NCBI RefSeq assembly: GCF_006345805.1
Contig: NC_043012.1
Span: 35,898,001 to 35,962,000, forward strand
Direction: 5' to 3'
DNA length: 64,000 nt
Source: Octopus sinensis
Taxonomy: Eukaryota
Part shown: one piece after another, positions 12,405 to 60,700 of the stretch
Position numbering within the stretch: the first letter of the stretch is position 1
How the letters are laid out: the number at the start of each line of letters is the position of its first letter
The notes under the pieces: generated by a model
Databases searched by the model: none
What the model saw: only the letters and a program-made list of their open reading frames with translations
What the model was told of the DNA's origin: nothing
Translations under genes and position numbers: made by a program

Positions 12405-14449
12405 CAAATAATTACAGAGGTATCGAGCTCTTGGATCAGGTAATGAAGATCACGGAGAGGGTCATAGCCCAACTAATTAGGGAGGGAGTCAGTTTGGATG
12501 AGATGCAGTTTGGTTTCATACCAGAGAAAAGCACCGCTGATGCTATATTTCTGGTGAGACAGCTGCAGGAGAAATACCTAGCCAAAGATAAGCCCCTGTG
12601 CCTGGCTTTCGTTGACATGGAGAAGGCCTTTGACAGGGTCCCCCCCCTGATCCCTTATCTGGTGGTCAATGAGGAAACTAGGGATAGATGAATGGTTAGT
12701 GAGAGCCGTGCAAGCCATGTACAGGGATGCTGTCTGTAAGGTGAGGGTTGGCAACGAGTACAGTGAAGAATTCCAGGTAGAGGTAGGGGTCCACCAAGGT
12801 TCAGTCCTCAGTCCCCTCCTATTTATCATAGTCCTCCAGGCAATAACGGAGGAATTCAAGACAGGATGCCCCTGGGAGCTCCTCTATGCTGATGACCTTG
12901 CTCTAATTTCTGAGTCACTAACAGAACTAGAGGAGAAATTCCAGGTGTAGAAGGAGGGATTAGAATCGAAAGGCCTTAGAGTCAACGTAGCTAAAGCCAA
13001 AGTCCTAATAAGTAGGAAGGCAGGCAAACCACAAATCTCTTCAGGTAGATGGCCCTGCTCGATCTGTAGAAAAGGCGTAGGTAGAAACTCTATAAGATGT
13101 ACCCAGTGTAAGCTATGGATACATAAGAGCTGCAGCAATATCAAAGGAAGGCTAACTGGGAGAATAGTTTTCGTATGTGGCAGATGCTCGGGAGCTATAA
13201 ATAATACTGAAAATGTGCAGAGAACAACTTCCGCCACATTCCAGGGAGAAAAACTAGAAGTAGTTGATAGCTTCCGTTACCTAGGTGACCAAGTCAGTAG
13301 CAGGGGAGGGTGCACTGAAAGTGTAGCTGCAAGAATAAAAATAGAGCTCTTACCTCTGCTGGTGACAAAGGGCCTCTCGCTTAGAGTAAAAGGTAGACTG
13401 TACGATGCAAGTGTACAAACAGCCATGCTACATGGCACTAAAACATGGGCCGTGACTGCTGAGGATATGCGTAAGCTCACAAGGAATGAAGCCAACATGC
13501 TCCATTGGATGTGTAATGTCAGTGTGCATACACGACAGAGTGTTAGTGCCCTGAGAGAAAGGTTGGACCTAAGAAGCATCAGATGTGGTGTGCAAGAGAG
13601 ACGACTGTGCTGGTATGGTCATATGATGAGAATGGATGTGGATAGCTGTGTGAAAAAGTGCCACACCCTAGCAGTTGAGGGAACCTGTGGAAGAGGTAGA
13701 CCCAGGAAGACCTGGGATGAGGTGGTGAAACACGACCTTCAAACATTGGGCTTCACTGAGGCAATGACTAGTGACCGGGACCTCTGAAAATATGCTGTGC
13801 TTCAGAAGACTCGGCAAGCGCAAGTGTGACCATAACCTTGTGGCCTATGCTAGGGGTGTAACCAGTCCACTTATACATGCCTTTTCTTCATTGGACACTA
13901 AACTCTACTTGCGAAGACCAGTTGAGGCAAGTGAAATTGAAATCGAAATCAAACTCGATTGCAAAGACCTGTTGAGGAACATGAAATCAATCAAACTCAG
14001 TGACTGGCATTTGTTGCTAGTGGAGCACTAAGAGTACCATACGAGTGAGATCGTTGCCAGAGCAACAAGCTGGCCTTCCTGCCGATGGCCCGTTAAACAC
14101 ACCATTCGAGTGTGATCGTTACCACGTCGCCTTACTAGCACTTGTGCTGGTGTTACATGAAACATTCAAGCGAGGTCATCACCAGTGCCGCTGGACTGGC
14201 TCCTGTGCAAGTGGCACATGAAAAGCACCATTTGGGTGTGGCCGTTGCCAGTACCACCAAACTGGCCTCGTGCCGGTGGCACGTAAAAGCACCCACTACA
14301 CTCTCGGAGTGGTTGGCGTTAGGAAGGGCATCCAGCTGTAGAAACTCTGCCAGATCAGATTGGAGTCTGGTTCACCAGACCTCAGTCAAACTGTCCAACC
14401 CATGCTAGCATGGAAAGCGGATGTTGAATGATGATGATGATGATGATGA

Positions 14450-35708: not shown

Positions 35709-36060
35709 CCTGACTCACAGAAGGCCAAAGATGGCAACAAGAAAATACGAAGGAAACTTCCTGCCATCCCAGCAGATGAAGAACCAGTAACTGCACCGAG
35801 GGCCCTTGGTGTTAAGAAGGGTCCTTTATTCAACACACCACCAGCTCCAAGTCGTAAGGCTCCAACACTCAAGACTGGAAAGCCCGCTACCAACATTGAT
35901 CCTGCACTCAGAGCAGATGAGAGTATTCGTGAGAGTATTTATGCAACTCCGGTGACCCAATTAACAAGTATGGATACATCAATGTCAGCACAACCAAATG
36001 GACGCAGTAGCAACCCAAACGTTGGTCACAAACAGAAATTAGGGCCAATTACTTCAAAAG
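35709..36060 (+). CDS. PCLO: Piccolo-like gene, coding exon ([10 protein letters not shown]3-ligand motif); second in-frame acceptor at 35721
   Basis: Long CT-rich tract + cag acceptor (phase 0). [24 protein letters not shown]...GPITSK. Donor AAAG|gtcagt (phase 1) matches the next exon. Confidence 0.8.
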
Positions 36061-41469: not shown

Positions 41470-41935
41470 ATCATAGTTGTTTAACGTCTACTTTCCATGC
41501 TGGCATGGGTTGGACAGTTTGACTGAGAGCTGGCTAAGGCGGCAAGCTGGCAGAAACGTTAGCATGCCGGGCGAAGTGCGTAGCCGTATTTCGTCTGCCG
41601 TTACATTGAGTTCAAATTCCACTGAGGTCGACTTTGCCTTTCATCCTTTCGGGGTCGATTAAATAAGTACCAGTTGCGCACTGGGGTCAATGTAGTCGAC
41701 TTAATCTATGTGTCTGTCCTTGTTTGTCCCCTCTGTGTTTAGCCCCTTGTGGGTAGTAAAGAAATAGGTTTGACTGAGGGCTGGCAAGCTAGGAGGCTGC
41801 ACCAGGCCCCAATCCAATCTGACAAAATTTCTACAGCTGGATGCCCTTCCTAACGCCGACCACTCTGTGAGTGTAGTGGGTGCTTTTTACGTGTCACTGG
41901 CACGGGAGCCAGCCAGGTGGCACTGGCAGGAGTTC
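41470..41935 (-). mobile_element. RTE 3'-tail fragment interrupted by a Deu/Nin-core SINE (41536-41770)
   Basis: tttccatgctggcatgggttggac..tgactgag resumes after the SINE as tgactgagggctggc..gagtgtagtgggtgctttttacgtg. Confidence 0.72.
41536..41770 (+). mobile_element. Near-complete SINE family B copy
   Basis: aaggcggcaagctggcagaaacgttagc...gggtagtaaagaaataggt, closely similar to 5992-6230. Confidence 0.8.
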
Positions 41936-42578
41936 TTTTCCCAGTGGACTCCTTGGATTCTTTTTTTTTACTCTGCTGGACCCTCATAGCCATTTAATGA
42001 TTAAATAATTCTGTTGTATTTTTATAATGAAATATTTTTAGGAATTGTATAAAAAAATATTATTCTTTTACTCTTTTATTAGTTTCAGCCATTTGACTGA
42101 GGCCATGCTGAAGGGTTTTAGTCAAACAATTGAACCCAGGACTTATTCTTTTTTTAAGCCTAGTACTTATCTTATCGGTCTCTTTTGCTGAACTGCTAAG
42201 TTACACGGACATAAATACATCAATAATGGTTGTCAAGTGGTGATGGGGAACAAACACTGACACAAAGACACACACACACACATACATATATGTATATATA
42301 TATATATATACATACATACATATACATACATAAATACATACATAAATCTACCAAATCCACTCACAAGGCTTTGGTCAGCCTGAGGCAATAGCTGAAGACA
42401 CTTTCCCATGCAGTGGGACTGAACCCAGAACCATGTGGTTGGGAAGCAAGCTTCTTACCACACAACTACAACAAAATCTTATGTGAACCCCCAAGTGTCA
42501 TACAGACCCTCAAGGATCATGTAGACCCTCCCAAAGGTCATTTGGACCCTCAAGGGTCATATGGTTGAGAACCACTGC
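41935..42578. mobile_element. hAT-type MITE copy interrupted by a SINE (42062-42470)
   Basis: Body similar to 28150-28250; right TIR ggttgagaaccactg about 70 nt before the 42650 acceptor. Confidence 0.55.
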
Positions 42579-42649
42579 TTTATATATTCTCTTTCATCTG
42601 TTTTATATTAACATATTATTTATTGTTTGTTGTTTATTTCTTCCACCAG

Positions 42650-44437
42650 GTGGCAGTACTCGGAATGGGAAACCAACAGAAAGTGGTGCAACCGGTAAAA
42701 TTGCCGCTTCATCTCATGCAAAACAAGGTTACGTACCTGACCAACCACCAAGGAGTGATGCTGAGGAGATAAACATTTTGTTCAGTGAGAGGAAAATGAT
42801 GAATCCCGAAGACAATATCAGACAGTATAGATCTGCAAGCTTTTCTGAATATCAGAGGCTGACTTCAAAACGGTCGGAACTGCATGGAGCCAGCACAACT
42901 CTGTTGCATGAGGAATTCTCACAAGACGAGAATGACCAAATCATAGATTCATTGGTCAGCATTTATGGAATTCCAATTAGTACTGCAATGAAGTCATTAA
43001 AAAGAAGACTTCAAGATGAGTTGCGAAAAGTTACGGAGAGTCGGAGGCGTAAGATAGAAGAACTTGAGGAAATCCACGCACTTGAGCAACAAATCGAAGA
43101 ATTAAAACTGGAATCAAAATCGGATTCTAAAGCTGCTTCATTTCTTCCAAATGGTCACAAGTCTCGATCCCTTCCAAGAAATGGCCGTGGCTTGGTGACG
43201 TCATCTTCATTCGATAAATCTACTGCAGTGCGTTCTTCTCCACAAATCATACCCAGACGTTCACGTCATCGGCGACAGGCATCAGATCCAATGATAGCAA
43301 AGTTTTCTCCTATCAAGGAAGACAAAGACATTGAAGCTGATTTTCAAGCTAAAGCTAGTGAGGCTTACGATGGTAAGTTCTCAAAGTATTCCACCGATGA
43401 CAGTTCCCAGTCAGGACTCAGTGATACGGAAAGCACTCGATCCGAGCCGACTGGAGAATCTTTGAACTCTGCCTACAAGAAGATCAAGCCTTCAGCTTAC
43501 GCCAAAATGTTTTACACTGGTCGAGCCCAGTCCACTGAACGAATTCACTCTTCAGACAGTGCACAGTACTTGTCATCCTCTGCTCCTTTGTCAAGCAGCC
43601 AATCAGAGTCGTTCCTTTCTGAAGGCTATGCTGGACATTCGAGAACACCCACTTACTTCTCAGATGATGAAGAGAAGCGAACTAAGGAGGAAAAAAGACA
43701 GATATTACAGTATGAAATAGAAAAGAGAAAGAAACAGCTTGAAGAGACTGCACGCTTGCAGCACGAACTTATTCGACTTTCTCGTGCTCGACAAGCTGTG
43801 GCCCACAGCTATGATGATATCCCCAGACGTTATGCCTATTCCACTAGTCCCAGACATGTACCGACTGGCATCATTAAGCCCTTGGATGACGAACTACCCT
43901 ATCAATTAGAACGCTACGTACAGAGCAGTCACGACATACATAAATCCGATAGTATGGACGCTAAACGAGCCCAGGAACTCGCTCAAGCTCAAGCTAACTA
44001 CAGCTCCACCGAATATCTAGCTCACAAACAAGAGCTTGCTCGGCGCCAGTTGTATGACGATTACTCCACTTATGGTTCGTACCCACCTTACGATGCAGGC
44101 TTAGGACAATCTCAGGTTTACCCTTCATCTCCAAACCTGATGAACCGCAGTGACTCTGGTCCTGTTATCATTCAATCAATGCCCCCCACTTTACCGTCAT
44201 CTGGAATCTCTGGTAGTGTCACTCTACCAGAAATCAACAGGTCAGACATGGATATTATGCCTTCCAGAGACCTACATCAACATCAGTTCTCCTCAGATAC
44301 AGATAACAGCCCAGCAAGTGATTACACACCTGCTATGCCGCTGTTGGATGATATCACCACCAGATCACGTAAGATCCTACATGATATTGGTAACCGACCC
44401 CTGTCTGCTGAGTTTAACTTGCCTGGAGGTGTTGATG
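42650..44437 (+). CDS. PCLO: Piccolo-like gene, 1788-nt coding exon with two coiled coils and an AKFSPIKEDKDIE box
   Basis: ccag|GT acceptor (phase 1), donor GATG|gtgagt (phase 1). Coiled-coil-like segments MKSLKRRLQDELRKVTESRRRKIEELEEIHALEQQIEELK and EEKRQILQYEIEKRKKQLEETARLQHEL. DPMIAKFSPIKEDKDIE resembles Piccolo DPKMSKFSPIQESRDLE (recalled). Confidence 0.9.
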
Positions 44438-45441
44438 GTGAGTGCAACTTTCTTATACACAATTCAATCATTAGTTTTTAATTAACAATGCATAATTAAT
44501 CATCCTTATTTGTTTTAACATCTACTTTTCCTTACTTGCTTATGTCAAATGAGACTTTGCTGAGGCAGTGTCTTCGCTGGTTCAATTCTCTCCTTGATGC
44601 TGATCCTCACCTGTTCCCAAGCAGTTTAATTATTTCCTTTGCCTGTTGAATAATGAACAGCCCAGCATGCTTTTGCAGGGGACTGCTAACAAATGACACA
44701 CCTCTCACCCTGCCAACTACTGTCCTATTGCACTCATTTACATACACCCCTTCCCACACACACACACATATGTATATATTGTATAAAAAGAACATAAATG
44801 GGGTTTTTACACCTACCCCACACCCAGAACCTACCCTGAGTCAGATCTACAGTTTAAACTGGTTTTGCTATTTACATATCAGCAACATGCTACCAACACA
44901 TGATACTTCGTGGTTGTTTTACCTCACTGTGAACCCTATGTTATGGTACCTAGCTAGTTCTGGCATCCTACGTGTTGATGTGCCTGGATTCTAATGACTC
45001 TGTAACTAATTTACACACACACACACACACACAGACATATATATATGTGTGTATGTAAGATAGGCTTCTCTCAATTCTCTTCTACCAGATGCATTCATAA
45101 AGCATTGATTGGCTTGGGACTCTGGAAGGCACCTATCCAAAGTGCCATGCGGAGAGACTGAACCTGAAACCATTTGGTTGGGAAGCAAACTTCTCTACCA
45201 CAGAACAAAAAAAAAAATGATAAAATAGCAAATTTGCAAAGGTGTTGGGGAGGGTTCTAATGGTTCAGGCAGTGTGTTTAATTGGAGAAATTAAGAGAGA
45301 TTTAACTGTGAGGCATTCATCTGTGGGAAAGTGGGATGGGGAAAGGGTTTGTGTTGATCAGGGCTCAAATCTCTCAGTAAAAATCATTTTATATTTCATA
45401 GTGGACATTGTTTTCTATTTTATATTCTATGTTTTGTGTAG

Positions 45442-45563
45442 ATTTAATGAATGCCATGTACCGAGTGGAAAGTGACAATAGTGTCGATGCTGATGAACCA
45501 ATCATGAAACATATGACAGAAGGAGGTGTCACCATTTTGAAACAGCTGGAACGGAAGAAACAG
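45442..45563 (+). CDS. PCLO: Piccolo-like gene, coding exon (DLMNAMYRVE...KQLERKKQ)
   Basis: tgtag acceptor (phase 1), CAG|gtaatt donor (phase 0), open frame joining both neighbours. Confidence 0.8.
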
Positions 45564-47686: not shown

Positions 47687-47771
47687 CCAGCACCAACACA
47701 ACCTAAACGGTACCCATTCATCACAAAAAGAATCTTACTTACAAGAGATCCAAAGGACAAGTCAATCAAAG
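47687..47771 (+). CDS. PCLO: Piccolo-like gene, exon encoding PDZ beta-A (PAPTQPKRYPFITKRILLTRDPKDKSIK)
   Basis: ttacag acceptor (phase 0), AAAG|gtttgt donor (phase 1). Peptide parallels Piccolo YIFPHARIKITRDSKDHTVSG (recalled). Not in the supplied ORF track; found by reading. Confidence 0.88.
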
Positions 47772-48136
47772 GTTTGTAACTATGGTTAATATATACATGT
47801 GTGTGTGTGTGTTACTGTTTTTGGCCCCGGGGAAGGGGCTGTGCCCGTAGCTTCTTCAAGCCCCACCAAAACCAGTGAAACCAACATAGTGAGTGCTCCT
47901 CTTGGACAGCTGCATGTTGATGGCCACAGGGGCAAAACATGGAGGGGGAAAGAATCGGGAGGGTGGATGTTGTGGGAGTGAAGAAGGACTGGAGAAATGG
48001 TTAATGGTGGTGATGGTGGAAGAGTAGAGACATTATGGGTGAAGTGAAGAGGAGGGATGAATGCATTAGTAGGTCCTGTAAAATGGTCATCATTGCTCCC
48101 CTTTCTCTTCTGACTAATAACCAACCCACCAGCCGA

Positions 48137-48192
<56 letters not shown>

Positions 48193-48282
48193 AAAAAGGA
48201 GATGTGGAACACGAGTTGTGATATATAAAAAAGGAAATGAAGAAAATGCTGACAAAATAATTTGTCAGCATTTTCTTCATTT

Positions 48283-48322
<40 letters not shown>

Positions 48323-48342
48323 TTATCATAAATATTATTCAA

Positions 48343-48532
48343 TGTACACAATATAAAGATACAAGCTATTTCTTGCTGTGAAGACACATGTCTTGGTCAG
48401 TTTTTATGATATGCCTTGTGTCTCCAAGCAATCTTTGGGCTCCAAGACACAAGGCATGTTATAAGAACTTACCAAGACACGTGTCTCCATAGCAAGAAAC
48501 TATTAGTGGCTTGTGTCTTTATACTCTGTACA
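48343..48532. mobile_element. Imperfect foldback MITE (a one-armed relative lies at 22157-22330)
   Basis: tgtacacaatataaagatacaagc..tttcttgctgtgaagacacatgtcttgg..tgccttgtgtct pairs with agacacaaggcatg..ccaagacacgtgtctccatagcaagaaa..gcttgtgtctttatactctgtaca. Confidence 0.65.
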
Positions 48533-49004
48533 CTAAATGATATTTATTTCTCACTTGATGGGGTATTTTAGTAATTAATGGAACAGTAAACTATATATAT
48601 ATATAATTAATCAAAGGACATACTAAGTATGTTTACCTGCTGGAAATAACAGTCAAAACTCTTATTTTCTTGTCACTTCAGTCCACACAGCTGGCAAAAG
48701 TGAGTTGTACCTGTAATTCAAAGGGGGAGGGGGCAGCCTTGTCACATTCTGTATCATGCTGAATCTCCCTGAGAATTATGTCAAGGATACATGTGTCTGC
48801 GGAGTACTCGGCCACATGCAAGTTAATTTCACAAACAGGCTGTTCAGTTGATCAGATCAACTGAAACACTTGTGGTGACTGATGGAATGGCAGTTGTCAT
48901 AAAACCGTTTATTGCCATAAGAATGTGCTCATCCATGGAACACTTGTTCATTCTCTGCCTCGTGACTCCACTGAAGAAAGGGATCACCAACTCTCATCAA
49001 AATA

Positions 49005-49350
49005 TGATGAACATCATCATCTTTATCATCTTTTACATCATCATCATCATCTTTTTTATCATCTTCATCATTATCTTCATGATCTTTTCCATCATCATCA
49101 TTGTCATCTTCCTCGTCTTTTTCATCATCATGTTCATCATCTTCATCATTATCATCATCATCTTTATAATTATCATCATCATCATTGTCATCGTCATCAT
49201 CATTTTCATCATCTTTTTCATCATCATCATCATCATCATTTTCATCATCATCATCATCATCCTCGTCTTTTTCATCATCATCATCATCATCTTCATAATC
49301 ATCATCATCTTCATCATCTTTTTAATCATCATCATCATTTTCTTTTCATC
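49005..49350. repeat. (ATC/TTC)n array
   Basis: Direct reading. Confidence 0.9.
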
Positions 49351-49975
49351 CTATTTTGATGAGGGTTGGTGGCCCACTTCTTCTTCAGTACAGTACCCCG
49401 GCATGTGGACTCTTAAACATGATTCTGCTTGTATAAAAAAAAAAAGTAAATAACTATGGCATAATTATATCAGCTCATTAGGCTGGGGTCTCCCTGGGTT
49501 TCCATCATCCATAACTGACCAACAGTGTGCCATTCACCCTCATGCCACACCACGAAAAGGATGCCATTCCATTACAGAGTGAACCTGCAGGGGTTAGGCC
49601 ACATACCTTCAGACACTGTGTACTCCATGACACTTGCCACATGCACAGACGTATAACATATTAGTGTAGACAAACACACACACACATAATATACTTGCAA
49701 CATTAACAGAGTGTTGAAGTTCTTAAACTCAGTCACCCTTATCTCCCAGAAAAGAGTGTGTGTGCGTGTGTTGGTGGATAGGTGTTATAGGGCCATCATT
49801 TGGCTGGGGACCCAACTACTATTTGTTGGCTCAGACTAATGAACAAAGCACAAATTAGATGTTCACAATGAAAACACTGTCACCTCCGCATCATCTCCTC
49901 ACTTGAGCAACATGGAACTACTGTCATAACATAACGAGTTTCCTTATAACTGATACGTACACATGTATATATGTG

Positions 49976-50011
<36 letters not shown>

Positions 50012-50031
50012 TATGTGTATATATATATGTA

Positions 50032-50082
<51 letters not shown>

Positions 50083-50234
50083 GTATATATATATATATAT
50101 GTATGTATGTATGTATATATATATGTATGTATATGCATACATATATATAGATATATCTATATATATGTATATATTTGTTGCAAAGATCCTCAATGTTATA
50201 ATTAGATATAATTTTATACACATGCATATATATA

Positions 50235-50282
<48 letters not shown>

Positions 50283-50374
50283 TATATGTATATGTATATA
50301 TATATGTGAGTGCGTGTGTGTGTGCATGTATGTGCACCCTGCAATATACATATATATTGTCGTCGTCATCATCA

Positions 50375-50575
50375 CCATCATCGTTTGACGTCCGCTTTCG
50401 ATGCTAGCATGGGTTGGACGATTTTGACTGAGGGTTGGTGAACCAGGTGGCTGCACCAGGCTCTAATCTAATCTGGCAGAGTTTTTTACAGCTGGATGCC
50501 CTTCCGTACACCAACCACTCCGAGAGTGTAGTGGGTGCTTTTACGTGCCACCGGCATGAGGGCCAGTCAGGCGGT
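50375..50575 (-). mobile_element. RTE 3'-tail fragment
   Basis: catcatcgtttgacgtccgc..gctagcatgggttggac..ccactccgagagtgtagtgggtgc. Confidence 0.75.
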
Positions 50576-50581
50576 ACTTTA

Positions 50582-50650
<69 letters not shown>

Positions 50651-51464
50651 GATGGATACAGATGTGTGTATATATATATATCCATCTATATATAAAAGCA
50701 TAATTACACGTAGGTATCTATGTATCTATATCTATATATGTATGTATGTATGTGTATATATATATATGTATGTATACATGCCCATACACATATATATATA
50801 TATTGAAATCTGTATAAACAAATATGTGTATACAGTTTACTTTACATGTCAAAAATTGAAAAAGAGATGGGATCCACTTCCCCAAATATTTTTTTACCCT
50901 CCCCCCCATATTAAGCATCTGGAGATGCAAAGAGGCAGAAATGATGATGTCATATCAGTAGGGTGGTCAGTTTTTACTGTCTAACAGCAGTCAACGCTGT
51001 TGCCCTTGTAGTAGTGGTGGTGGTGGTGGTGTGGTGGTGGTGGTGGTTGCGGTGTGAGGAAAGTACCTAGAAAGTTCCTTCATGTAGAAAACTGTTCCCT
51101 TAATTCAATAATTTCTTCCAGGCCTCGCCCATCCTGCCTCTAACCCTTCCAAAAACAATCTTATCTTAACAAATTGCTTTGTTATTTTTCTTCACACCCT
51201 GCTCTCCCCTTTTATATTTATTTAATTCTATTTGTTTTATTTCATTTTGTTTTTCTCTATCTTTCTCTCAGGGAATATCTGTCAAACACAAACATTCACA
51301 CTTTTTTCCATCCCTGCCATGACATCCACCCCAACCCCTAGTCCAAGCACTATCTACCACCCCAGCCTGTGCAATTAAACATAAACAGCTTATTAAGGTC
51401 TCCATCTCTCTTTGTAGAACCCTACCAACTTTCCACTGGGTCTCCAGTAAGGGTGGTTTTTAGG

Positions 51465-52185
51465 TAGTAGTGATGGCGGGAGGGGTGGGAACTGTGGTAC
51501 TTTCAGTAGTAATGGTGGTGGTGGTGGTGGTGGTGGTGGTGGTGATGGTGGTGGTGGTGGTGGTGGTGGTGGCGGCGGCGGCGGCGGTGGTGGTGATGGT
51601 GGTGGTGGTGGTAGTAGTTGTAGTCATAGTGTTGCTGTCATTCAACCCCAGCTCAGTTTTGATCAAGAAATTCTATCTTCAAAAGCCATTCCAGCCATGC
51701 CCATCTTATCTAGGGCTACTTTGTCCATTGTGTCCTTTGTTTTGGGGGGGTTTTTTTCTTCAGATAACAGTATGTAATCAGTGAGTGTTTGGTTTCTGTT
51801 TCTAGCAGTTTGGAGTGACTGTATAGAGACTCCCTGGTTGTTCCTGGAGGTAGTGGTGTTGGATAATGGTGGTGAGAAGGGGATGGTGAGGTGGCAGGGA
51901 TATGGAAAAGCGATGGTGGTAGTGGTGGTGATTGTGATAAAGGTGGTAGAGGTGTTGTTATTGTTGTTGTTGGTGGTGGTGGTGGTGATTATGGTGAAAG
52001 TGTTGTGATGGTAGTGATGGTGGTGGTGGTTGTGATGATGGTGGTGGTGGTGGTGAAGTTGTTGTTGCTGTTGTTGGTGATGGTAATGGTGGTAGAGGTG
52101 GAGGTAGTAGTGGTGATGATGGTGGTGGTGTTGAAGGTGTTGTTGCTGGTGGTGGTGGTGGTGGTGGTAGTGGTGGTGGTGTAGG
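51465..52185. repeat. (GGT)n-rich arrays
   Basis: Direct reading. Confidence 0.85.
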
Positions 52186-53184
52186 AGATAGCAGTGTGAA
52201 TTTGTCACTCGGAAGAGAGCTGTCTTTCTGTTTATTTATTTTATAATTTCTTCCCATCTCATCTCCACCACCACAACCACCGTACACCACCATTGCCAAT
52301 ACCATGCACCAATACACCACCACCACCACCACCATAATCTCTTCCTCCTCTTCCCTCTCCCCATGGTATGGGACAAAGGGAGATGAATAAAAAAAATGGG
52401 GTGCAAATTACAGTTTATTTTCTCTTATTTTGTTTCCACAATTTCATGTCTGTGTGTGGTGGGGGTGGTGGTCTTTGCTTTCTGGTTTTTTTTTTTTGTA
52501 TTTCTATTTATTTTATTTTCATTGTTTCTCTTTTGTTATTTCCCATACTCCGAATTAAGTTTAGAAGACGGATAAAAGACAGGAATGTTCCCAAGAGACC
52601 TGGGAACTGATTCTTTCTTTAACAAACAACTAACTCAAATGTCCTTTCTTTCGATTCGAAAACACCCACAAGAATTGTCTACAGCAGAGTTACACTTGGC
52701 AATATTTGAACTAGAGGTGATGCAGTGGCTTTTATCCATTTGCTTAGTTCATCTCGAAGCAAAACCACTCCCCTCCGCAAAAACCCAACTGCAAAATTAA
52801 ATGATAAATAAGTAAATAATAATAATAATATAATAATAATAATAATAATAATAATATAATAATTATAATAATAATAATAATAATAATAACGATAATAATA
52901 ATAATAATAATAATCCTTTCTGTTATTGGCGCAAAGCCTGAAATTTTTGGGAAGGAATGAGTGAGTCATTTACATCAACCCCAATGTTTATTTGGTATTC
53001 ATTTTATTGCCCCACCATAAAATAAGAGAATGAAAGGCAAAGTTAACTTTGGTGGGATTTGAACTCAGAACTTGAAGAGCCAAAAGAAATGCTACTAAAG
53101 CATTTTGCCCAATGTGCCAATGTGCCAGCTGACCACCTTTTTGATGATGATTATGATGATGACGATGATGATAATAATGACAAT

Positions 53185-53355
53185 AATCATAATCATCGTT
53201 TAACGTCCGCTTTCCATACTAGCATGGGTTGGACGAATGACTGAGGGCTGGCAAACCAGATGGCTGCACCAGGCTTCAATCTTGATCTGGCAGAGTTTCT
53301 ACAGCTGGATGCCCTTCCTAATGCCAACCACTCCGAGAGTGTAGTGGGTGCTTTC
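53185..53355 (-). mobile_element. RTE 3'-tail fragment
   Basis: catcgtttaacgtccgctttccatactagcatgggttggac..ccactccgagagtgtagtggg. Confidence 0.75.
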
Positions 53356-53414
53356 ATTATAATAATAGCAATAGATAAATAAATAAATTAATTTCTGTCG
53401 TAGTAATAATAATG

Positions 53415-53445
<31 letters not shown>

Positions 53446-53769
53446 TGATGATGATGATGATGATAGTTAATAAATAAAATCAAAAGGATTGAAATAAAAG
53501 CGAAGCTTTTTAAATTCCCCCACCATCTAAACCAATTCTTTGTAATCCTACTCTGCCTTAACATAATTCTGAAAACCATTAGAAATGAGAGAAGCAGGAC
53601 TAATATAACTACATATATACATACATACATATATGATATATATATATGTGTGTGTGTGTATATATATATGGATATGGATATATTAAAAGAAGAGAGAGAG
53701 TTAAGCCAGGAGGGTAATTGGTGCCTTTGCTAACCAGCATCAATTGTTCTACCACTCTGCTTTTTCTAG

Positions 53770-53805
53770 GTGGCCACAGAGATCCAAAAGATCTATCAAT
53801 GAAAG
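53770..53805 (+). CDS. PCLO: Candidate 36-nt symmetric cassette exon (GGHRDPKDLSMK) duplicating the PDZ loop motif
   Basis: CTAAC branch-like site at 53730, tttttctag acceptor, AAAG|gtttgt donor identical to the 47771 donor, phase 1-1. Encodes RDPKDLSMKG versus RDPKDKSIKG in the preceding exon. Confidence 0.7.
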
Positions 53806-54323
53806 GTTTGTGTGCTATTTTTATTTATTAATTTCTTTCCCCCTCTCTCTCTCTCTCCCCCTCTCCAATGTTCTTGATCTATCCCCCATCATCGTCAAAC
53901 CGTGAAAGTGCCGCTGTTGCTATATAGTCCCCGCCCCCTGCTAATTCCACGTCCCCTTCTTCTTCTTTGCTCTCTGCAACTGGTTTTCATAACCAGAAGC
54001 GTTATACACTTTATTCTGACCGGGGCATTTTAAGAAACCCCTTAACCCTTTTATTACCACATTTCTCTTGAAGTACACAGTTTGTATTCATTATTTGAAA
54101 ATAATAAATAATTTTAAAAAATTAATTTTGTTATTATTAAGCTGGAATTTGGAACAAACAGTAGTAGGAAATTTCGATAGAAGGCTTTAATTAAGGTCCT
54201 TTTAAAACAGGGAGTTTGTATCAGAGAAGCAGGGGCAGTTTCAAGCAGGTTCATATCAAATGGCTCAAAATGCAGTTAGCAGTTTTGGGGATGGTTTTCA
54301 AAAGCCATATATATATATTATAT

Positions 54324-54365
<42 letters not shown>

Positions 54366-54376
54366 TATATATATAT

Positions 54377-54410
<34 letters not shown>

Positions 54411-56437
54411 CATATATATGTATATATATATATATATATATATGGATATAGATATATAGATATAGATAATTATATATATATAATATAAATATAGATATAA
54501 ATATATAGATGTATGTTTTTATAATGTAAAGGAATTGGGATTTGAAATCTGGGCACCCTGATACAATCCAGATCTGCCTAACCACATCAATTAATAAGGA
54601 ACATTAAGAATCATTTCAGATAAACATTAAACTTTCTAACTTTCTGGGTGCAATCCCATGGTCATTTATGACTGAAGGGGTTTCTATACATACACACATA
54701 CATACATACATACATGCATACATACATACATACATACTACATACATACATACATACATACATACATACATACATACATACATACATACATACAATTCATG
54801 AAAGAATGTGATGTAGTAAAGCTTATCAAAATTTTAAAACTGTACCCACCTTATGTGGCCCATTCACAACAGTGCAATGTATTATTATTCTGATGCATTT
54901 TAATAAAGCTATGGGTGTGTCCCTTCATATTATGGAACAACTTATCAGTTAGGGTCAGGGTTATTATTGGAGGGACAACACATTGTGTGTTTGTTCTGTG
55001 ATGTTTCAGTTATTCTGTGTGCGCCTGTTAACCATATCCTCTGTATGTGTGTGAGGAGTGAGGTTAGTTAGGGTTTGCTTGTATATTTTGTTTTTATAAT
55101 TTCTTAGTGACTTAATCAGAGGTGAGAGGGTATCATCCATGGTTGGTGGAAATAAGGAAATTCATTACCCTCAAACCATAATCCAAGCTTACATCCTTGA
55201 AACAGAGGTAGAGACCAAAAAGTAGCTAAGGAAATGGTATTAGTGTTAAAATGGACAATCCATTAAGTCCTATATCCCACAAACTCCATCTCTCAGATGC
55301 AATTTTTGTGGAGTAAGACTTAATCCTGTCTCCCAGACAGGCTTCCTCACAATTTCCCTCCACCAAATTATGCTTGCAATACTTTGATCAACCCAGTGCT
55401 ATGACAGAAGACACTTCTCCATTGTGCTGTGCAGAAGGATCAAACCTGAAAACATGTATTTGGGAAGAAAAGGTCTTAAGCATGCTTTGTTGGGATGAAA
55501 AACCACCACATGACACACCCTCACCCTGCTGCCCCATATGCAACACTTCCTCACTTCCACATGCTCTACCATTCCTGCACAACATTACTGCCCACTCAAT
55601 TTGTTCCTACTACAGCATTATGCCCTATGCATAACATGCCCTCACACTCATACGACACCCCACAACATCCCTTCACTATCACTCTGTATACCCTACAGTA
55701 ACACTTTGACCCCAGGCTACACTAAACTATAGTAACAAAGAGAAACTGTGGGACCCCAGGCAACTTGTGATGGTATGAAGTGGTACAGAGGAAAGTCACA
55801 AAGCAGAATAAATTATATTTCAATGTAAGGAATGAGCAAAGTGTGCGATTTGGGGGCAGAGACCCTTCAGACGAAGGGCTTGGCCCTCAACATTAGATTT
55901 CTATCCCTTCTCATAGTACAATAATCAGCTCTTATTTTGTGAATGTTTTCAACAAGACATTAGATGGTTGAGAGCATCAGTGTGTTGCTACAGAGTAAAT
56001 AACTAGTCATCTCTCTCTCTCGTGTTGACCATATCTATTGACCACCACACTTATCAACTTGGCCCAAACCAGTACAGCATCACACTGAGCCATTTCTCTA
56101 TCCTATGGAAATTTTAGCTCTCCAAGGATCGACTTAGCTTCTTCTCCCTCTGGGGTTTGATAAAATAAGTACCAGTCATAAACTGTGTGCCCCTGACCAA
56201 TAGCTTTTGTCCTTTTGCCTTCATAATAAACCATTATTGGTCCCTATATCTAAGAATTGAGGATCTCATCGAGGACTTTCCTTTATACAATAGCAAATGT
56301 CTATAACAGCATACTATTATAATCTTCCATAGATGATGCATTAAATTATTAAGGTCATCCATACTTATGTCAGCATGATCTTACAACCTCCCATACATTC
56401 AGTAATGAGTTATTAAGGTCGTCCGTCTTTCTTTGTA

Positions 56438-56688
56438 TTGGGTTGGTGCATAATTATTGCGGAATTTTTTGCAACAAATTTTATTCAACAAAAACAATAA
56501 CAATATTTAATAAAAACATCTTTAAATGACGGCCTGACTTTCTTCCAAGCAAATGGGAAGCTGTAATTGAAGTAGATGGTGAATATGCTCCAGAATAATC
56601 ATTTAAAGATGTTTTTGTTACATGTTGTTGTTTTTGTTGAATAAAATTTGTTGAAAAAAAAAGCCACAATAATTATGCACCAAGCCAA
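56438..56688. mobile_element. Mariner-type foldback MITE
   Basis: TA|ttgggttggtgcataattattg...caataattatgcaccaagccaa|TA with long imperfect arms; loop encodes LPSKWEAVIEVDGEY, like a mariner C-terminus. Confidence 0.85.
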
Positions 56689-57070
56689 TATATAAGTCAT
56701 CACAATTGAGAGGTCAACATTGGGCCATCAGTGACCAAAGCTCAGTTGGAACCCCTCACTTCATCATTGCTCTCTGTGTCTGTCAGACAAATTAAAGCTT
56801 CTCACTATTTGTGCTGCCTGCTTTCTTACCTCCTCCTCTCACTCACCCTATCATCGTCACACTCTCTTACTCCTCCTCCTTCACCTCACTAACACTCTCC
56901 TCTTCCTCCACCTCCTCCTTCCTCTCTTTACACTTATTTTCCCTTTTACCATTTATTGTCTTCTGATATATTTTATAAGTCTTATGAATCTGTTCTTTTC
57001 TTTTTTATGTTTATGTTTGTGTGTGTGACTAATAACATAAATAGATATATACATATGCATACATACATAC

Positions 57071-57112
<42 letters not shown>

Positions 57113-57120
57113 TACATTAT

Positions 57121-57392
57121 ATATAAGGGCTTAGTAAAATAAATTACTTTGCCACATACTGAACTCATTAGAAATAGCAGCTAAAGAAATTTCTTCAGCT
57201 ATTTCTAATACTTAAAGAAGATCTCTCTCAGATAGTGTTTGCCTAAACTAACTCACAAAAGTTAGTTTAGGCAAACACTATCTGAGAGAGATCTTCTTTA
57301 AGTATTAGAAATAGCTGAAGAAATTTCTTTAGCTGCTATTTCTAATGAGTTCAGTATGTGGCAAAGTAATTTATTTTACTAAGCCCTTATAT
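57121..57392. repeat. Perfect inverted repeat: 133-bp arms, 6-nt loop (cacaaa)
   Basis: 57121-57253 is the exact reverse complement of 57260-57392 by manual comparison; imperfect extension to about 57110/57402. Confidence 0.95.
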
Positions 57393-57489
57393 TAATGTAA
57401 TATTTTGAATTCGCCTATAATGGTCCCTTTACATACTGAATACTTGGTGAAATTGATTAATAATTAATTAATTTTACCCTCAATTGTTG

Positions 57490-57534
<45 letters not shown>

Positions 57535-57769
57535 ATATTATATATATATATATATACTTATATATATGTGTGTGTATATATATATATATATGTGTGTGTG
57601 TGTATACATATATATATGTGTGTGTGTATACATATATATGACTGTTAGCTCCTAGGTCTTATGTGCATGTGGTGGAACAGTGAGGTAGAAAGGGCCATAA
57701 AAAAAGAAGGGACAAGTTTGGAAATAGTGGAAAGATGGAGGTTGCAAAGAACCCTACTGAATAGTTACA

Positions 57770-58245
57770 AAAGCAAGAGGTTTATCTAGCAAAATATTCT
57801 TGTCACCATTAGGACAAGAATAAGATGGCGAAATTTCAGAGAGCCAATACCTGTGTTGGCAACAAGAAGCCAGTCGTAACTTTGAGTGAAAGGTAGATTG
57901 TATGATGTTTGTATATGGACAGGTAGTGAGACAAATGCAGAGGACATTGTGAAGGTTGAGCAGGAACGAGGCTAGTGTGCTCTTCGGATGTGCAGTGTTA
58001 GTGTGTTTGTACGACAAAATGCAAATGTATTGAGAGAAAAGTTTGGCATAAGAGGAGTCAGAGTAAGCAGGAGAGGAGACTGTGCTGGTCATGTGATGCT
58101 GGTCATGTGATGAGGACAGTTGTATGAAGAAGTGCCAGACATTTAGAGTGGATGGAATTTGTGGAAGAGAGGGATCCAGGGAGGCATGGGACAAAGTATT
58201 GAAGGCTGATCTCAAGATGCTGGTCCTTACAGAGGAGATAGCATA
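57770..58245 (+). mobile_element. Degenerate RTE LINE ORF-end relic
   Basis: Similar to 13370-13770 (gtgctggtcatgtgatgagg..tgaagaagtgccagac..tggaatttgtggaagag..gcatgggacaaag). Confidence 0.65.
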
Positions 58246-58590
58246 GTCCCTGGTTCAGTCCCATCATGTGGCACGCTGGGCAAGTGTCTTCTACTATAGC
58301 CTTGGAGTGGATTTAGCAGACAGAAACTGAAAGAAGCCTATTGCACATATATGTATCTCTGAGTGTGTGTGTGTCTTTGTGTCTGTGTTTGTCCCCCGCT
58401 ACTGCTTGACAACCAGTGTTGGTGTGTTTATGTCCCTGTAACTTAGTGGTTCAGTTAAAGAGACCGATAGAATAAGCACAGGTTTTACAAAGAAACAATA
58501 AGTACTGGGGTCGATTCATACAACTAAAATTCTTCAAGGCCATGCCCCAGCATGGCCACAGTCTAATGAGAGAAACAAGTAAAAATAAAG
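58245..58590 (+). mobile_element. SINE family A copy
   Basis: ggttcagtcccatcatgtggcac..gaaactgaaagaagcc..ccccagcatggccacagtctaatgag. Confidence 0.7.
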
Positions 58591-59015
58591 ATATGTGTAT
58601 ACACACACACACACACACACCTTCATCAGTACCAATTCAACAGAGTGGAACATTTACTTGGTCCCTAACACCTAATGTTCATCTTCCTGAAACCCTTTGC
58701 TTTTATAATCCTGTTCACTCTAAAAGCAGTACAATAATAAATGGTCAGAATTCCTGTTAGAATCCACAGAAAACCCAAACTGTAGACAAATAAGACAATA
58801 GTCAGGGCAGGAGACAGAATGTTGTTCCTGGAACTGATGGCACCACAAATGAAATATCCTGACTTCCAATTTGTGCTCTTGTTTATGTTTTGTTTTGTAT
58901 TTTTGTTTTGTTTTCCCAATCTCTGCTTTTTGTGATTTATTGTGAATCAGTGGCTTTCAATAATGCCTTGTCCAATGTGTTTTTAATCTGCTGTGGTTTC
59001 TCATTTGTCTGGCAG

Positions 59016-59141
59016 GAAATGGAATTGGGATGAAAATTGTTGGAGGTAAACAGCAAGGACCTGACGAAGAGATGGTGGCATATGTAGCAGCCATTTATCC
59101 TGGAGGTATTGCAGAACAGCTACATGGAGAGCTGGAAGAAG
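59016..59141 (+). CDS. PCLO: Piccolo-like gene, PDZ exon (GNGIGMKIVGGKQQGPDEEMVAYVAAIYPGGIAEQLHGELEEG)
   Basis: ggcag acceptor, G|gtaaga donor, phase 1-1. Close match to the Piccolo PDZ [43 protein letters not shown] (recalled). Confidence 0.92.
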
Positions 59142-59164: not shown

Positions 59165-60010
59165 ACCATTTTTTGCCTATGGACCCCTAATGATTCTTAA
59201 GGACCCTCATAACCATTTGATATTTTTAAAAATCCCATTACACTTTTATATTTGAATTCTTTAATTAATTTAATTCATCGTTTAACGTTCATTTTCCATG
59301 CTGGCATGGGTTGGATGGTTTGACTGAGGTCTGGGAAGCCAGGCAACTGCACCAGGCCCCATTCTGATCTGGTAGTATTTCTACAGCTTGATGCCCTTCC
59401 TAATGCCAACCACTCTAAGAGTGTAGTGGGTGCTTTTTACATGTCACTGGCACAGGGGCCAGAGGAGCTGACATCGACCATGATCGGATGGTACTTTTTA
59501 CATGCGCCGGCATGGAAGCCAGTCAAAGTGGCACTGGCATCGGTCACGTTCAGATGGTGCTTTTTACGTGCTACTGGCATGGGGGTCACAACTACAATTT
59601 CCATTTGATTTGATGTTGATATATATGACTCAATAGGTCTCCTCAAGCACGGTATGTTGCCCTACAATCCAAGGTGGGCTGGTTATGTGACACTGGTGTA
59701 AGTTACAGCTGTGGACTCACTTTATTTGCCAGTTCTTGTCAGTCACAGCATACCTCCAGCAGTCTCGCTCTTTTGTCATTGCCTCTGTGAGGCCCAACAT
59801 TCAAAGGTCATGCTTCACCACTTCATCCCCTGTCTTCCTGGGTCTCCTTCTACCCTAGATTGCTTCCACTGTTTGGGAGTGGCACTTCTTCACACAGCTC
59901 TAAATATCATTAGGCATTGTATAAAAAAAATTTTAATATTTTGTATATTGTAGAAGTAAAACCAGTATTTTAATAATAAAATCTTATATGGACCCCGGTT
60001 GAGAATCACA
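59165..60010. mobile_element. hAT-type MITE copy split by the RTE fragment
   Basis: caaccattttttgcctatggacccc..gaccctcataaccattt on the left; gaccccggttgagaatcacag on the right. Confidence 0.5.
59268..59895 (-). mobile_element. RTE LINE 3' fragment (ORF end + 3' UTR)
   Basis: Reverse complement matches 13650-14430 (KKCH..RRPRKTGDEVVKHD, cccactacactc..ttaggaagggcatc, ccaacccatgccagcatggaaa). Confidence 0.8.
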
Positions 60011-60349: not shown

Positions 60350-60700
60350 CATCATCATCATCATCGTTTAACGTCTGCTTTCCATGATAGCATGGGTTGG
60401 ATGAATGACTGAGGACTGGTGAACCAGATGGCTGCACCAGGCTTCAATCTTGATCTGGAAGAGTTTCTACAGCTGGATGCCCTTCCTAACGCCAACCACT
60501 CCAAGAGTGTAGTGGGTGCTTTCACATGCCATCGGAACGGGGGTCAGTCAGGCAGTACTGGCAATGACCTCGCTCGAATCTTTTACACATGCTACTGGCA
60601 CAGGTGCCAGTAAGGCGATGCTGGTAACGATCACGCTCGAATGGTGTCTTTTACGTGCCACCGGCACAGAGGCCAGATAGCCGCTCTGGCAACGATCACC
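60350..60700 (-). mobile_element. RTE 3'-UTR fragment with internal subrepeats
   Basis: catcatcgtttaacgtctgc..gagtgtagtgggtgc..ttttacgtgccaccggcac, reverse complement of 14000-14430. Confidence 0.75.

What the first reader, a model, noticed from the sequence alone, without database searches (positions are those of the whole stretch)
53725..53812. A duplicated 36-nt mini-exon that would insert a second RDPKDxSxKG copy into the PDZ carboxylate-binding loop
Seen: the exon at 47687-47771 ends ...LLTRDPKDKSIK-G|gtttgt. Six kb downstream, an isolated 36-nt segment reads (G)GHRDPKDLSMK-G|gtttgt with the same donor, its own tttttctag acceptor, a CTAAC branch-like site about 35 nt upstream and a TGC just before the pyrimidine tract. 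It is phase 1-1, so inclusion or skipping keeps frame with the GNGIGMKIVGG exon. Known: this position is the beta-A to GLGF-type loop that grips the ligand C-terminus; vertebrate Piccolo uses a 9-residue alternative insert to switch C2A calcium binding; UGC near the 3' splice site marks Srrm/eMIC-regulated neural microexons. Inference: exon-end duplication created a splice switch that lengthens the PDZ binding loop by 12 residues, a possible lineage-specific tuner of active-zone interactions.
Basis: partly seen in the sequence, partly recalled or inferred. Interest (0 to 1): 0.8.

Follow-up and report, generated by a model that had tools for sequence, protein, structure and literature searches.

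The report
Candidate duplicated mini-exon in Piccolo-type PDZ
A 36-base partial copy of the preceding exon's end sits in an 11-kb intron of a cephalopod Piccolo-type synaptic scaffold gene; it has full splice signals and would add 12 residues to the ligand-gripping loop of the PDZ domain, but whether it is ever spliced in could not be tested here.

Summary
Window 53770-53805 is a 36-nt, stop-free, phase 1-1 segment. Its last 28 nt plus the donor GTTTGT (53778-53811) match the end of exon 47687-47771 at 28 of 34 positions. Sixty local shuffles gave at most 26. The decamer AAAGGTTTGT occurs only at these two sites. The segment has a CTAAC branch-like site and an acceptor richer in pyrimidines than those of the neighbouring real exons.

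The gene encodes a Piccolo-type PDZ; the only PDB hit is 1UJD, human Piccolo. The insertion point lies in the betaA-betaB (carboxylate-binding) loop. The copy keeps every residue that mollusc orthologues conserve and differs only at variable positions. The flanks show no homology. Both points argue for selection on the peptide.

Usage is untested. No cephalopod transcript or orthologous intron could be reached. The one annotated cephalopod orthologue, from Acanthosepion pharaonis, has the skipped form. Four complete A-C introns and one partial one from non-cephalopod animals lack a copy, but several of those species vary the length of this loop at the same spot.

Verdict: a plausible cassette exon derived from a partial exon duplication (about 0.5), against a silent relic (about 0.35). 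The Srrm/eMIC and ligand-tuning ideas remain inference. Interest is moderate to low until junction reads exist.

The parts
47687..47771 (+). Exon A, the parent exon. It encodes PAPTQPKRYPFITKRILLTRDPKDKSIK(G): PDZ strand betaA and the first part of the betaA-betaB loop. The donor is AAAG|GTTTGT.
   Evidence: tblastn of the Acanthosepion protein P0039 and four mollusc proteins maps here.
47744..47777 (+). Parent copy of the 34-nt repeated core: AGAGATCCAAAGGACAAGTCAATCAAAG|GTTTGT.
53730..53734 (+). CTAAC, a branch-point-like motif. The branch A is 36 nt upstream of the acceptor G.
   Evidence: CTRAY occurs at 3.2 per kb in the window, so about 0.1 is expected in a 30-nt zone.
53750..53769 (+). 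Pyrimidine tract and acceptor, TACCACTCTGCTTTTTCTAG. It has 15 of 18 pyrimidines, a TGC at 53758-53760, and no AG in the 15 nt before the acceptor AG.
   Evidence: The acceptors of exons 45442, A and C score 12, 12 and 13 of 18. Only 34 sites this strong exist in 64 kb (5.3e-4 per nt).
53770..53805 (+). Candidate 36-nt cassette exon, phase 1-1, without a stop codon. It would insert 12 residues, giving ...KSIKG-GHRDPKDLSMK-GNGIG...
   Evidence: Usage in mRNA was not tested.
53778..53811 (+). Daughter copy of the repeated core including the donor: AGAGATCCAAAAGATCTATCAATGAAAG|GTTTGT. It matches the parent at 28 of 34 positions.
59016..59141 (+). Exon C. It encodes GNGIGMKIVGGKQQGPDEEMVAYVAAIYPGGIAEQLHGELEE: the GLGF-type motif plus betaB and betaC of the PDZ. 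It starts in phase 1.
   Evidence: It is 85% nt identical to the cuttlefish-like contig L001.

Best explanation
The 36-nt segment is a frame-preserving cassette exon that arose from a partial duplication of the 3' end of the preceding PDZ exon. The duplication carried that exon's donor with it. A new acceptor and branch site lie 8 nt upstream of the copied core.

When included, the exon adds 12 residues. This makes a second copy of the conserved RDPKDxSxKG segment in the betaA-betaB loop of a Piccolo-type PDZ domain, immediately before the GNGIG motif. The loop grows from about 14 to about 26 residues.

Because the insert is a repeat of the loop itself, the sequence next to betaA (LLTRDPKD...) and the sequence next to the GLGF-type motif (...S-[I/M]-K-GNGIG) stay the same in both isoforms. 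The fold should therefore tolerate the insert, while access to the peptide-binding groove, or its geometry, is likely to change.

Shown here: the duplication, the reading frame, the splice signals, the position in the loop, and a pattern of differences that fits selection on the peptide. Inferred only: inclusion in mRNA, tissue regulation and any effect on binding.
For: 1. The homology is real: 28/34 identical, above all 60 shuffles in an all-exon scan, and a unique shared decamer AAAGGTTTGT.
2. The flanks are not homologous while the core is 82% identical. Uniform neutral decay of a large duplication does not give this pattern.
3. All six nucleotide differences spare the seven residues that mollusc orthologues conserve (R, D, P, K, D, S, K). 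Two are synonymous and four fall in the two variable positions. Random placement achieves this in 0.1-0.2% of simulations, or about 3% by my hand estimate if AAG>CTA counts as one event.
4. An acceptor as strong as this one occurs at 5.3e-4 per nt. The chance of one lying in frame within 30 nt upstream of the core is about 0.5%. A CTAAC sits at the right distance.
5. The length is a multiple of three and the phase is 1-1, whereas the 85-nt parent exon could not be co-included in full.
6. The insertion site is a low-confidence loop (pLDDT about 57) between betaA and betaB in the model of the cuttlefish orthologue, and it aligns to the same loop in 1UJD.
7. The loop tolerates extra residues at exactly this spot in other mollusc-type relatives: +3 through a distal tandem donor in the Patella vulgata model, +3 in L009, +1 in transcript-derived P0092, and a longer insert in the Pomacea model.
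Against: There is no transcript evidence of any kind. No protein in the 5.8-billion or 1.84-billion sequence sets contains the insert. These sets hold almost no cephalopod transcripts, so the negative result is weak.

The only annotated cephalopod orthologue (Acanthosepion pharaonis, P0039) has the skipped form.

Conservation in other cephalopods could not be examined. The Acanthosepion gene range was too long for DNA to be returned. Contigs of the close relative stop 9 kb short.

Exons of 36 nt are hard to define, and the GTTTGT donor is weak.

The 8 non-homologous nucleotides form a perfect palindrome, GTGGCCAC. That could be a repair-junction scar of a short templated insertion, an origin that needs no selection.

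The selection test is post hoc, and the finding was noticed because the peptide looked conserved.
Confidence: 0.5

Rival explanations
1. Silent relic or pseudo-exon. A short patch of exon A plus its donor was copied into the intron, for example by a templated insertion during break repair or by capture within a mobile element. It happens to lie behind an acceptor-like tract and is never, or only negligibly, spliced in.
For: Homology is only 34-35 nt with sharp edges. A perfect 8-nt palindrome, GTGGCCAC, sits exactly at the left junction. The intron is full of dispersed repeats and microsatellites. The Acanthosepion model lacks the insert. No expressed sequence containing it was found. From general knowledge, pseudo-exons with good splice sites are common in long introns.
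Against: This reading needs three coincidences: a rare long-distance short-patch event, a strong in-frame acceptor (about 0.5%), and substitutions that all spare conserved residues (0.1-3%). The copy is already 18% diverged yet remains open and in frame.
Confidence: 0.35
2. Constitutive small exon. In this species the segment is always included, so the normal protein has the 26-residue loop, and gene models without it simply miss a short exon.
For: The acceptor is stronger than those of the flanking constitutive exons (15 of 18 pyrimidines against 12-13), and the donor is identical to that of exon A.
Against: The cuttlefish model and all other mollusc proteins and transcripts join A directly to C. 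Very short exons with weak donors are usually skipped at least in part (general knowledge).
Confidence: 0.07
3. Recursive-splicing or intron-subdividing site. The AG|GT junction at 53769/53770 helps stepwise removal of the 11.2-kb intron, and the 36 nt are removed again rather than kept.
For: An acceptor is directly followed by GT (ctag|GTGGCC) near the middle of a long intron.
Against: The 5' splice site regenerated after the first step would be AAAG|GTGGCC. It lacks the +4A, +5G and +6T consensus positions. Recursive splicing also would not explain why the coding residues are preserved.
Confidence: 0.04
4. Chance resemblance.
For: None beyond the AT-rich composition of the window.
Against:: 28/34 exceeds every shuffle. 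The shared decamer is unique. The position, strand and frame all fit.
Confidence: 0.01

Closest known systems
Alternative exons derived from tandem exon duplication (reviewed in PMC8373072)
   Same: An intronic copy of a neighbouring exon sequence, on the same strand, with its own splice sites, encoding a homologous peptide.
   Different: Classical cases duplicate the whole exon and are mutually exclusive substitutions. Here only the last 28 nt plus the donor are copied. Parent and copy differ in length modulo 3 (85 against 36 nt). The only in-frame use is therefore additive, giving a tandem peptide repeat.
PTP-BL (PTPN13) PDZ2as, a 5-residue alternatively spliced insert in a PDZ loop (PMC4365404)
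   Same: A short, alternatively spliced insertion inside a PDZ domain, next to the binding groove. In that case it leaves stability intact but lowers ligand affinity.
   Different: That insert (VLFDK) is in the beta2-beta3 loop and is experimentally proven. This one would be 12 residues in the betaA-betaB (beta1-beta2, carboxylate-binding) loop, is a repeat of the loop itself, and is unproven.
Piccolo C2A 9-residue splice insert (Garcia et al. 2004, cited in PMC4709825)
   Same: The same protein family. A short alternative insert retunes a folded domain of an active-zone scaffold.
   Different: A different domain (C2A, not PDZ), found in vertebrates, and not derived from duplication.
Srrm/eMIC-dependent neural microexons (PMC8797185)
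   Same: The described cis code of these exons includes a UGC close to the 3' splice site, a CUAAY branch site and a UCUC-containing pyrimidine tract. This site has CUAAC, CUCU and UGC at -12. The host gene is synaptic.
   Different: At 36 nt it is longer than the classical limit of 27 nt (my own knowledge). Its 3' splice site looks strong rather than weak. The AG exclusion zone is only about 31 nt. Neural specificity and Srrm dependence are untested.
Loop-length variation at the same intron in other mollusc-type relatives
   Same: Extra residues appear exactly at the exon A / exon C junction: the Patella model uses a distal tandem donor (+3 aa), L009 has +3 aa, and P0092 has +1 aa.
   Different: Those arise by donor shift or in-exon insertion, not by a separate duplicated exon, and none repeats the RDPKD motif.

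Membership tests
Piccolo/Fife-type member of the RIM superfamily (host gene) | PDZ domain closest to the Piccolo PDZ | tested here: met
   The only PDB hit at E<=0.01 is 1UJD (KIAA0559, human Piccolo PDZ), E 1.7e-12. Orthologue P0039 carries PF00595. The AF2 model shows PDZ-like secondary structure.
Piccolo/Fife-type member of the RIM superfamily (host gene) | C2 domain(s) downstream of the PDZ | tested here: inconclusive
   These lie outside the window. Orthologous loci and transcripts do have them: L003 has C2 ORFs about 7 kb downstream, and P0092 has PDZ plus PF00168.
Piccolo/Fife-type member of the RIM superfamily (host gene) | Assignment to Piccolo rather than spiralian Fife (molluscs have both, PMC9282427) | not tested
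   No phylogeny was run. Source names are mixed: 'protein piccolo' for Elysia and 'regulating synaptic membrane exocytosis protein 2' for Patella.
Alternative exon derived from exon duplication | Significant sequence homology to a neighbouring exon of the same gene, on the same strand | tested here: met
   28/34 identical, above all shuffles.
Alternative exon derived from exon duplication | Own splice sites and a frame-compatible length | tested here: met
   tttttctag|G acceptor, CTAAC, G|GTTTGT donor, 36 nt, phase 1-1, no stop codon.
Alternative exon derived from exon duplication | Mutually exclusive use with the parent exon | tested here: not met
   85 nt against 36 nt differ modulo 3, and the copy lacks the first 57 nt of the parent. 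Only additive inclusion keeps the frame.
Alternative exon derived from exon duplication | Both isoforms observed in transcripts | not testable with these tools
   No cephalopod transcript of this gene is in the searchable collections.
Srrm/eMIC-dependent neural microexon | Length of 27 nt or less (classical limit, my own knowledge) | tested here: not met
   The segment is 36 nt.
Srrm/eMIC-dependent neural microexon | UGC close to the 3' splice site, strong CUAAY branch site, UCUC-rich pyrimidine tract (PMC8797185) | tested here: met
   TGC at -12 and two more within 50 nt (0.64 expected), CTAAC at -40 to -36, and CTCT in the tract. The statistical support is weak.
Srrm/eMIC-dependent neural microexon | Weak 3' splice-site region and a long AG exclusion zone | tested here: not met
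   15 of 18 pyrimidines, stronger than the neighbouring exons. The AG exclusion zone is about 31 nt.
Srrm/eMIC-dependent neural microexon | Neuron-specific inclusion dependent on Srrm | not testable with these tools
   This requires RNA-seq or perturbation experiments.
Recursive splice site / RS exon | A strong 5' splice site regenerated at the AG|GT junction | tested here: not met
   The junction would read AAAG|GTGGCC, which does not match the consensus at +4 to +6.

The most novel reading that the evidence does not exclude
A cephalopod-lineage-specific, regulated cassette exon, born from a partial exon duplication, doubles the bilaterian-conserved RDxKDxSxxG segment of the carboxylate-binding loop in a Piccolo-type PDZ. 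It thereby switches the ligand access or specificity of an active-zone scaffold between neuron types. This would be a splice-controlled beta1-beta2 loop repeat, for which I found no precedent in PDZ domains.
Probability: 0.2. Interest if true: 0.55.

Novelty: new member of a known kind. Interest (0 to 1): 0.35.

Why it matters
If the exon is used, it would be a clear example of how a partial exon duplication can create an in-frame loop-repeat isoform inside a folded interaction domain. It would also give cephalopods a lineage-specific way to diversify a core presynaptic scaffold by splicing.

The repeat preserves the sequence context at both ends of the loop. This suggests a general route by which insertions into binding loops become tolerable.

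If the exon is not used, it is an ordinary intronic relic. The result then mainly warns that good-looking splice sites plus peptide similarity are not evidence of expression.

Tried and rejected
1. Transcripts or proteins carrying the insert. Three word-indexed searches were run: the 82-aa A+mini+C peptide, the 619-aa spliced model, and a concatenate of ORFs around the mini-exon. One exhaustive HMMER run against 1.84 billion representatives was also done. None contains the insert. The sets hold mostly genomic ORF fragments, so the negative result is weak.
2. Orthologous cephalopod intron. The Acanthosepion gene spans 118 kb and no DNA was returned. Contigs of the close relative are 2.5 kb. The cuttlefish-like contig L001 has only 1.3 kb upstream of exon C. 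Exact look-ups of window ORFs found nothing on record.
3. Degenerate DNA pattern scans of JGI metagenomes and GTDB genomes. The result was nothing, or one unrelated bacterial hit.
4. Extended homology beyond the core. Only microsatellites align. The possible terminal inverted repeats flanking the segment (arms at 53567-53597 and 53962-53992, 71% complementary) are at chance level by my estimate.
5. Structure prediction of the inclusion isoform. Only the skipped cuttlefish PDZ was modelled.
6. The Pomacea locus, to check its annotated insert. It is not on record.
7. Rbfox GCATG motifs within 400 nt of the segment: none. Rfam and tRNA scans of the window: nothing.
8. Identifying the species through run accessions in the literature: no hits.

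Full report
**Observation**

- Exon A (47687-47771, 85 nt) encodes PAPTQPKRYPFITKRILLTRDPKDKSIK and ends AAAG|GTTTGT.
- Exon C (59016-59141, 126 nt) starts in phase 1 and encodes GNGIGMKIVGGKQQGPDEEMVAYVAAIYPGGIAEQLHGELEE.
- In the 11.2-kb intron between them, 53770-53805 reads ctttttctag|GT GGC CAC AGA GAT CCA AAA GAT CTA TCA ATG AAA G|gtttgt.
- This segment is 36 nt, phase 1-1 and free of stop codons. A+C and A+mini+C both stay in frame. Inclusion gives ...RDPKDKSIKGGHRDPKDLSMKGNGIGMKIVGG....

**Is it more than chance?**

Window 53778-53811 matches 47744-47777 at 28 of 34 positions.
- A degenerate 34-mer finds only these two sites, and none of 100 shuffles did as well.
- I compared every 34-mer of the five mapped exons with the whole + strand. 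This pair is the top hit at 28, and the best unrelated hit is 24. Sixty locally shuffled windows gave maxima of 23-26.
- AAAGGTTTGT occurs only at these two places.
- Homology is confined to 34-35 nt. Upstream and downstream flanks align only through TA/TG microsatellites.

**What gene is this?**

- The only PDB match at E<=0.01 is 1UJD (KIAA0559, the human Piccolo PDZ), where [22 protein letters not shown] aligns with TRDPKDKSIKGNGIGMKIVGGK.
- A spliced model of the window exons finds an annotated 946-aa protein of the cuttlefish Acanthosepion pharaonis. It is reported as 90% identical with 100% query coverage and carries a PDZ.
- Weaker hits (54% identity and below) are mollusc proteins named 'protein piccolo' or 'regulating synaptic membrane exocytosis protein 2'.
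- Window exons map at 35709-36059, 42649-44437, 45442-45563, 47687-47771 and 59016-59141. The last PDZ exon and the C2 exons lie beyond the window.
- Molluscs have RIM, Piccolo and Fife (PMC9282427). I did not resolve Piccolo against Fife.

**Where in the fold?**

I modelled the cuttlefish orthologue's PDZ with AlphaFold2 from a 6-sequence alignment (mean pLDDT 76).
- betaA is KRILLT.
- A low-confidence loop is RDPKDKSIKGNGIG.
- betaB is MKIVGGKH.
- The exon junction (K|G) is inside this betaA-betaB loop, two residues before G-I-G-M, the GLGF-type motif.

Inclusion would lengthen the loop from about 14 to about 26 residues.

**Exon-likeness**

- The acceptor tract has 15 of 18 pyrimidines, YAG, and no AG in the 15 nt before the acceptor AG. 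The three neighbouring real acceptors score 12, 12 and 13.
- Only 34 sites in 64 kb are this strong. An in-frame one within 30 nt of the core has a chance probability of about 0.5%.
- CTAAC sits with its branch A 36 nt upstream of the acceptor G. About 0.1 such motif is expected in that zone.
- The donor is identical to the presumably constitutive donor of exon A.
- Three TGC lie in the 50 nt upstream, against 0.64 expected.
- These features resemble the eMIC cis code described in PMC8797185: UGC near the 3' splice site, a CUAAY branch site and UCUC tracts. However, the exon is 36 nt and its 3' splice site is strong, so membership of that class is not established.

**Signature of constraint**

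- The copy differs from the parent at six nucleotides.
- Two are synonymous (AAG>AAA, GAC>GAT).
- Four fall in the two positions that also vary among orthologues (K>L, I>M).
- The seven residues that mollusc orthologues keep (R, D, P, K, D, S, K) are all retained.
- Random placement of six substitutions achieves this without a stop in 0.1-0.2% of trials. By my hand estimate it is about 3% if AAG>CTA is one event.
- Together with flanks that have lost all similarity, this favours either selection on the peptide or a short-patch origin.
- The test is post hoc and the finding was noticed because of its peptide, so I weight it moderately.

**Comparative evidence**

- The annotated cuttlefish protein has the skipped form ...RDPKDKSIKGNGIG....
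- A cuttlefish-like Logan contig (L001) shares exon C at 85% nt with unalignable introns, but reaches only 1.3 kb upstream.
- A close relative (Logan SRR11869384/90/91) is 94.1% nt and 99% aa identical in the large exon. That is an ideal distance for this test, but its contigs are 2.5 kb.
- Non-cephalopod animal loci show the same phase-1 intron and no second copy: L003 (298-nt intron), Patella L007 (about 0.96 kb), L009 (about 3.5 kb), L010 (about 0.5 kb) and L011 (4.7 kb examined).
- The element is therefore not an ancient molluscan feature.
- Loop length nevertheless varies exactly here. The Patella model uses the distal donor of ACAG|GTACGACAG|GTAAAA (+3 aa). L009 encodes RDPKDRSLSGRK|G (+3). 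The transcript-derived P0092 has KAGNG (+1). The Pomacea model has a longer, unverified insert.

**Interpretation**

The data fit best a cassette exon born from a partial duplication whose breakpoint fell inside exon A. The 85-nt parent could not be co-included in frame, but the 36-nt version can. Because the insert repeats the loop, both loop ends keep their native neighbours.

A proven parallel exists for a short spliced insert in a PDZ loop that lowers ligand affinity without destabilising the fold: PTP-BL PDZ2as, in the beta2-beta3 loop (PMC4365404). A short insert also retunes the Piccolo C2A domain (Garcia et al. 2004, cited in PMC4709825).

The functional effect here is inference. The review lists only Epac2/cAMP-GEFII as a partner of the Piccolo PDZ (PMC4709825).

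**Rivals**

- A silent relic remains a serious alternative at about 0.35. The patch is short. An 8-nt perfect palindrome, GTGGCCAC, forms exactly the non-homologous part at the left junction. No expression evidence exists.
- A constitutive exon (0.07), a recursive-splicing site (0.04; the regenerated donor AAAG|GTGGCC is poor) and chance (0.01) are less likely.

**Verdict**

If real, this is a new member of a known kind: an alternative exon derived from duplication, and a spliced loop insert in a PDZ. Interest is 0.35 until junction reads or cephalopod conservation are checked.

Noticed in passing
window 53770-53777: The 8 nt of the mini-exon that are not homologous to exon A form a perfect palindrome, GTGGCCAC, exactly between the acceptor and the copied core. 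This may be a repair or hairpin junction scar of the duplication event. It encodes Gly-Gly-His.
   Followed up: partly
L007 3480-3499 (Patella vulgata OW026354.2): The orthologous exon ends with tandem donors 9 nt apart: ACAG|GTACGACAG|GTAAAA. The annotated protein uses the distal one and adds TGT (3 aa) to the same PDZ loop. The proximal donor would give the canonical loop length, so this is a possible alternative 5' splice-site pair.
   Followed up: partly
L009 14855-14895 (ENA ERZ25071447 ctg84775): In this mollusc-like genome exon A encodes RDPKDRSLSGRK|G, three residues longer than in the window, with a GTAAGA donor. The loop length is not fixed across species.
   Followed up: partly
P0048 (Pomacea canaliculata) and P0003 (ENA, 627-nt contig): The Pomacea model reads RDPKDRSLYFPWVVPSTGNGIG, a different insert at the same spot, which could not be checked. 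In P0003 the exon A and exon C sequences are contiguous in one genomic ORF (RDPKDRSVAGNGIG) while the next intron is present. That suggests loss of the A-C intron in that lineage.
   Followed up: no
window 53270-53356; copies at 60438-60524, 14286-14369 (-), 59353-59436, 50457-50541, 41803-41886: A dispersed element of about 85 nt, SINE-like, with copies 86-97% identical. Several copies lie in this gene's introns, one of them 400 nt upstream of the mini-exon.
   Followed up: no
window 42467-44611 against L004-L006 (Logan SRR11869391/90/84): The large coiled-coil exon is 94.1% nt but 99% aa identical to a related species, so nearly all differences are synonymous and purifying selection is strong. 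The alignment ends about 175 nt into the intron.
   Followed up: partly
window 47772-59015: The A-C intron is 11.2 kb here, against 0.3-3.5 kb in four non-cephalopod animals. It is packed with TA/TG, TAA and CT microsatellites, for example at 53401-53454, 53637-53680 and 53838-53865.
   Followed up: no
P0039 (Acanthosepion pharaonis, GCA_903632075.3): The annotated cuttlefish protein ends shortly after the PDZ and has no C2 domains, whereas orthologues (P0092, P0042, locus L003) continue into C2. The model is probably truncated or split, so its lack of the mini-exon carries little weight.
   Followed up: no
window 53467-53479 and 53819-53831: A 13-nt perfectly complementary AT-rich pair (TTAATAAATAAAA / TTTTATTTATTAA) brackets the mini-exon. 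It is probably chance in AT-rich sequence, but it could loop out the exon in pre-mRNA.
   Followed up: no
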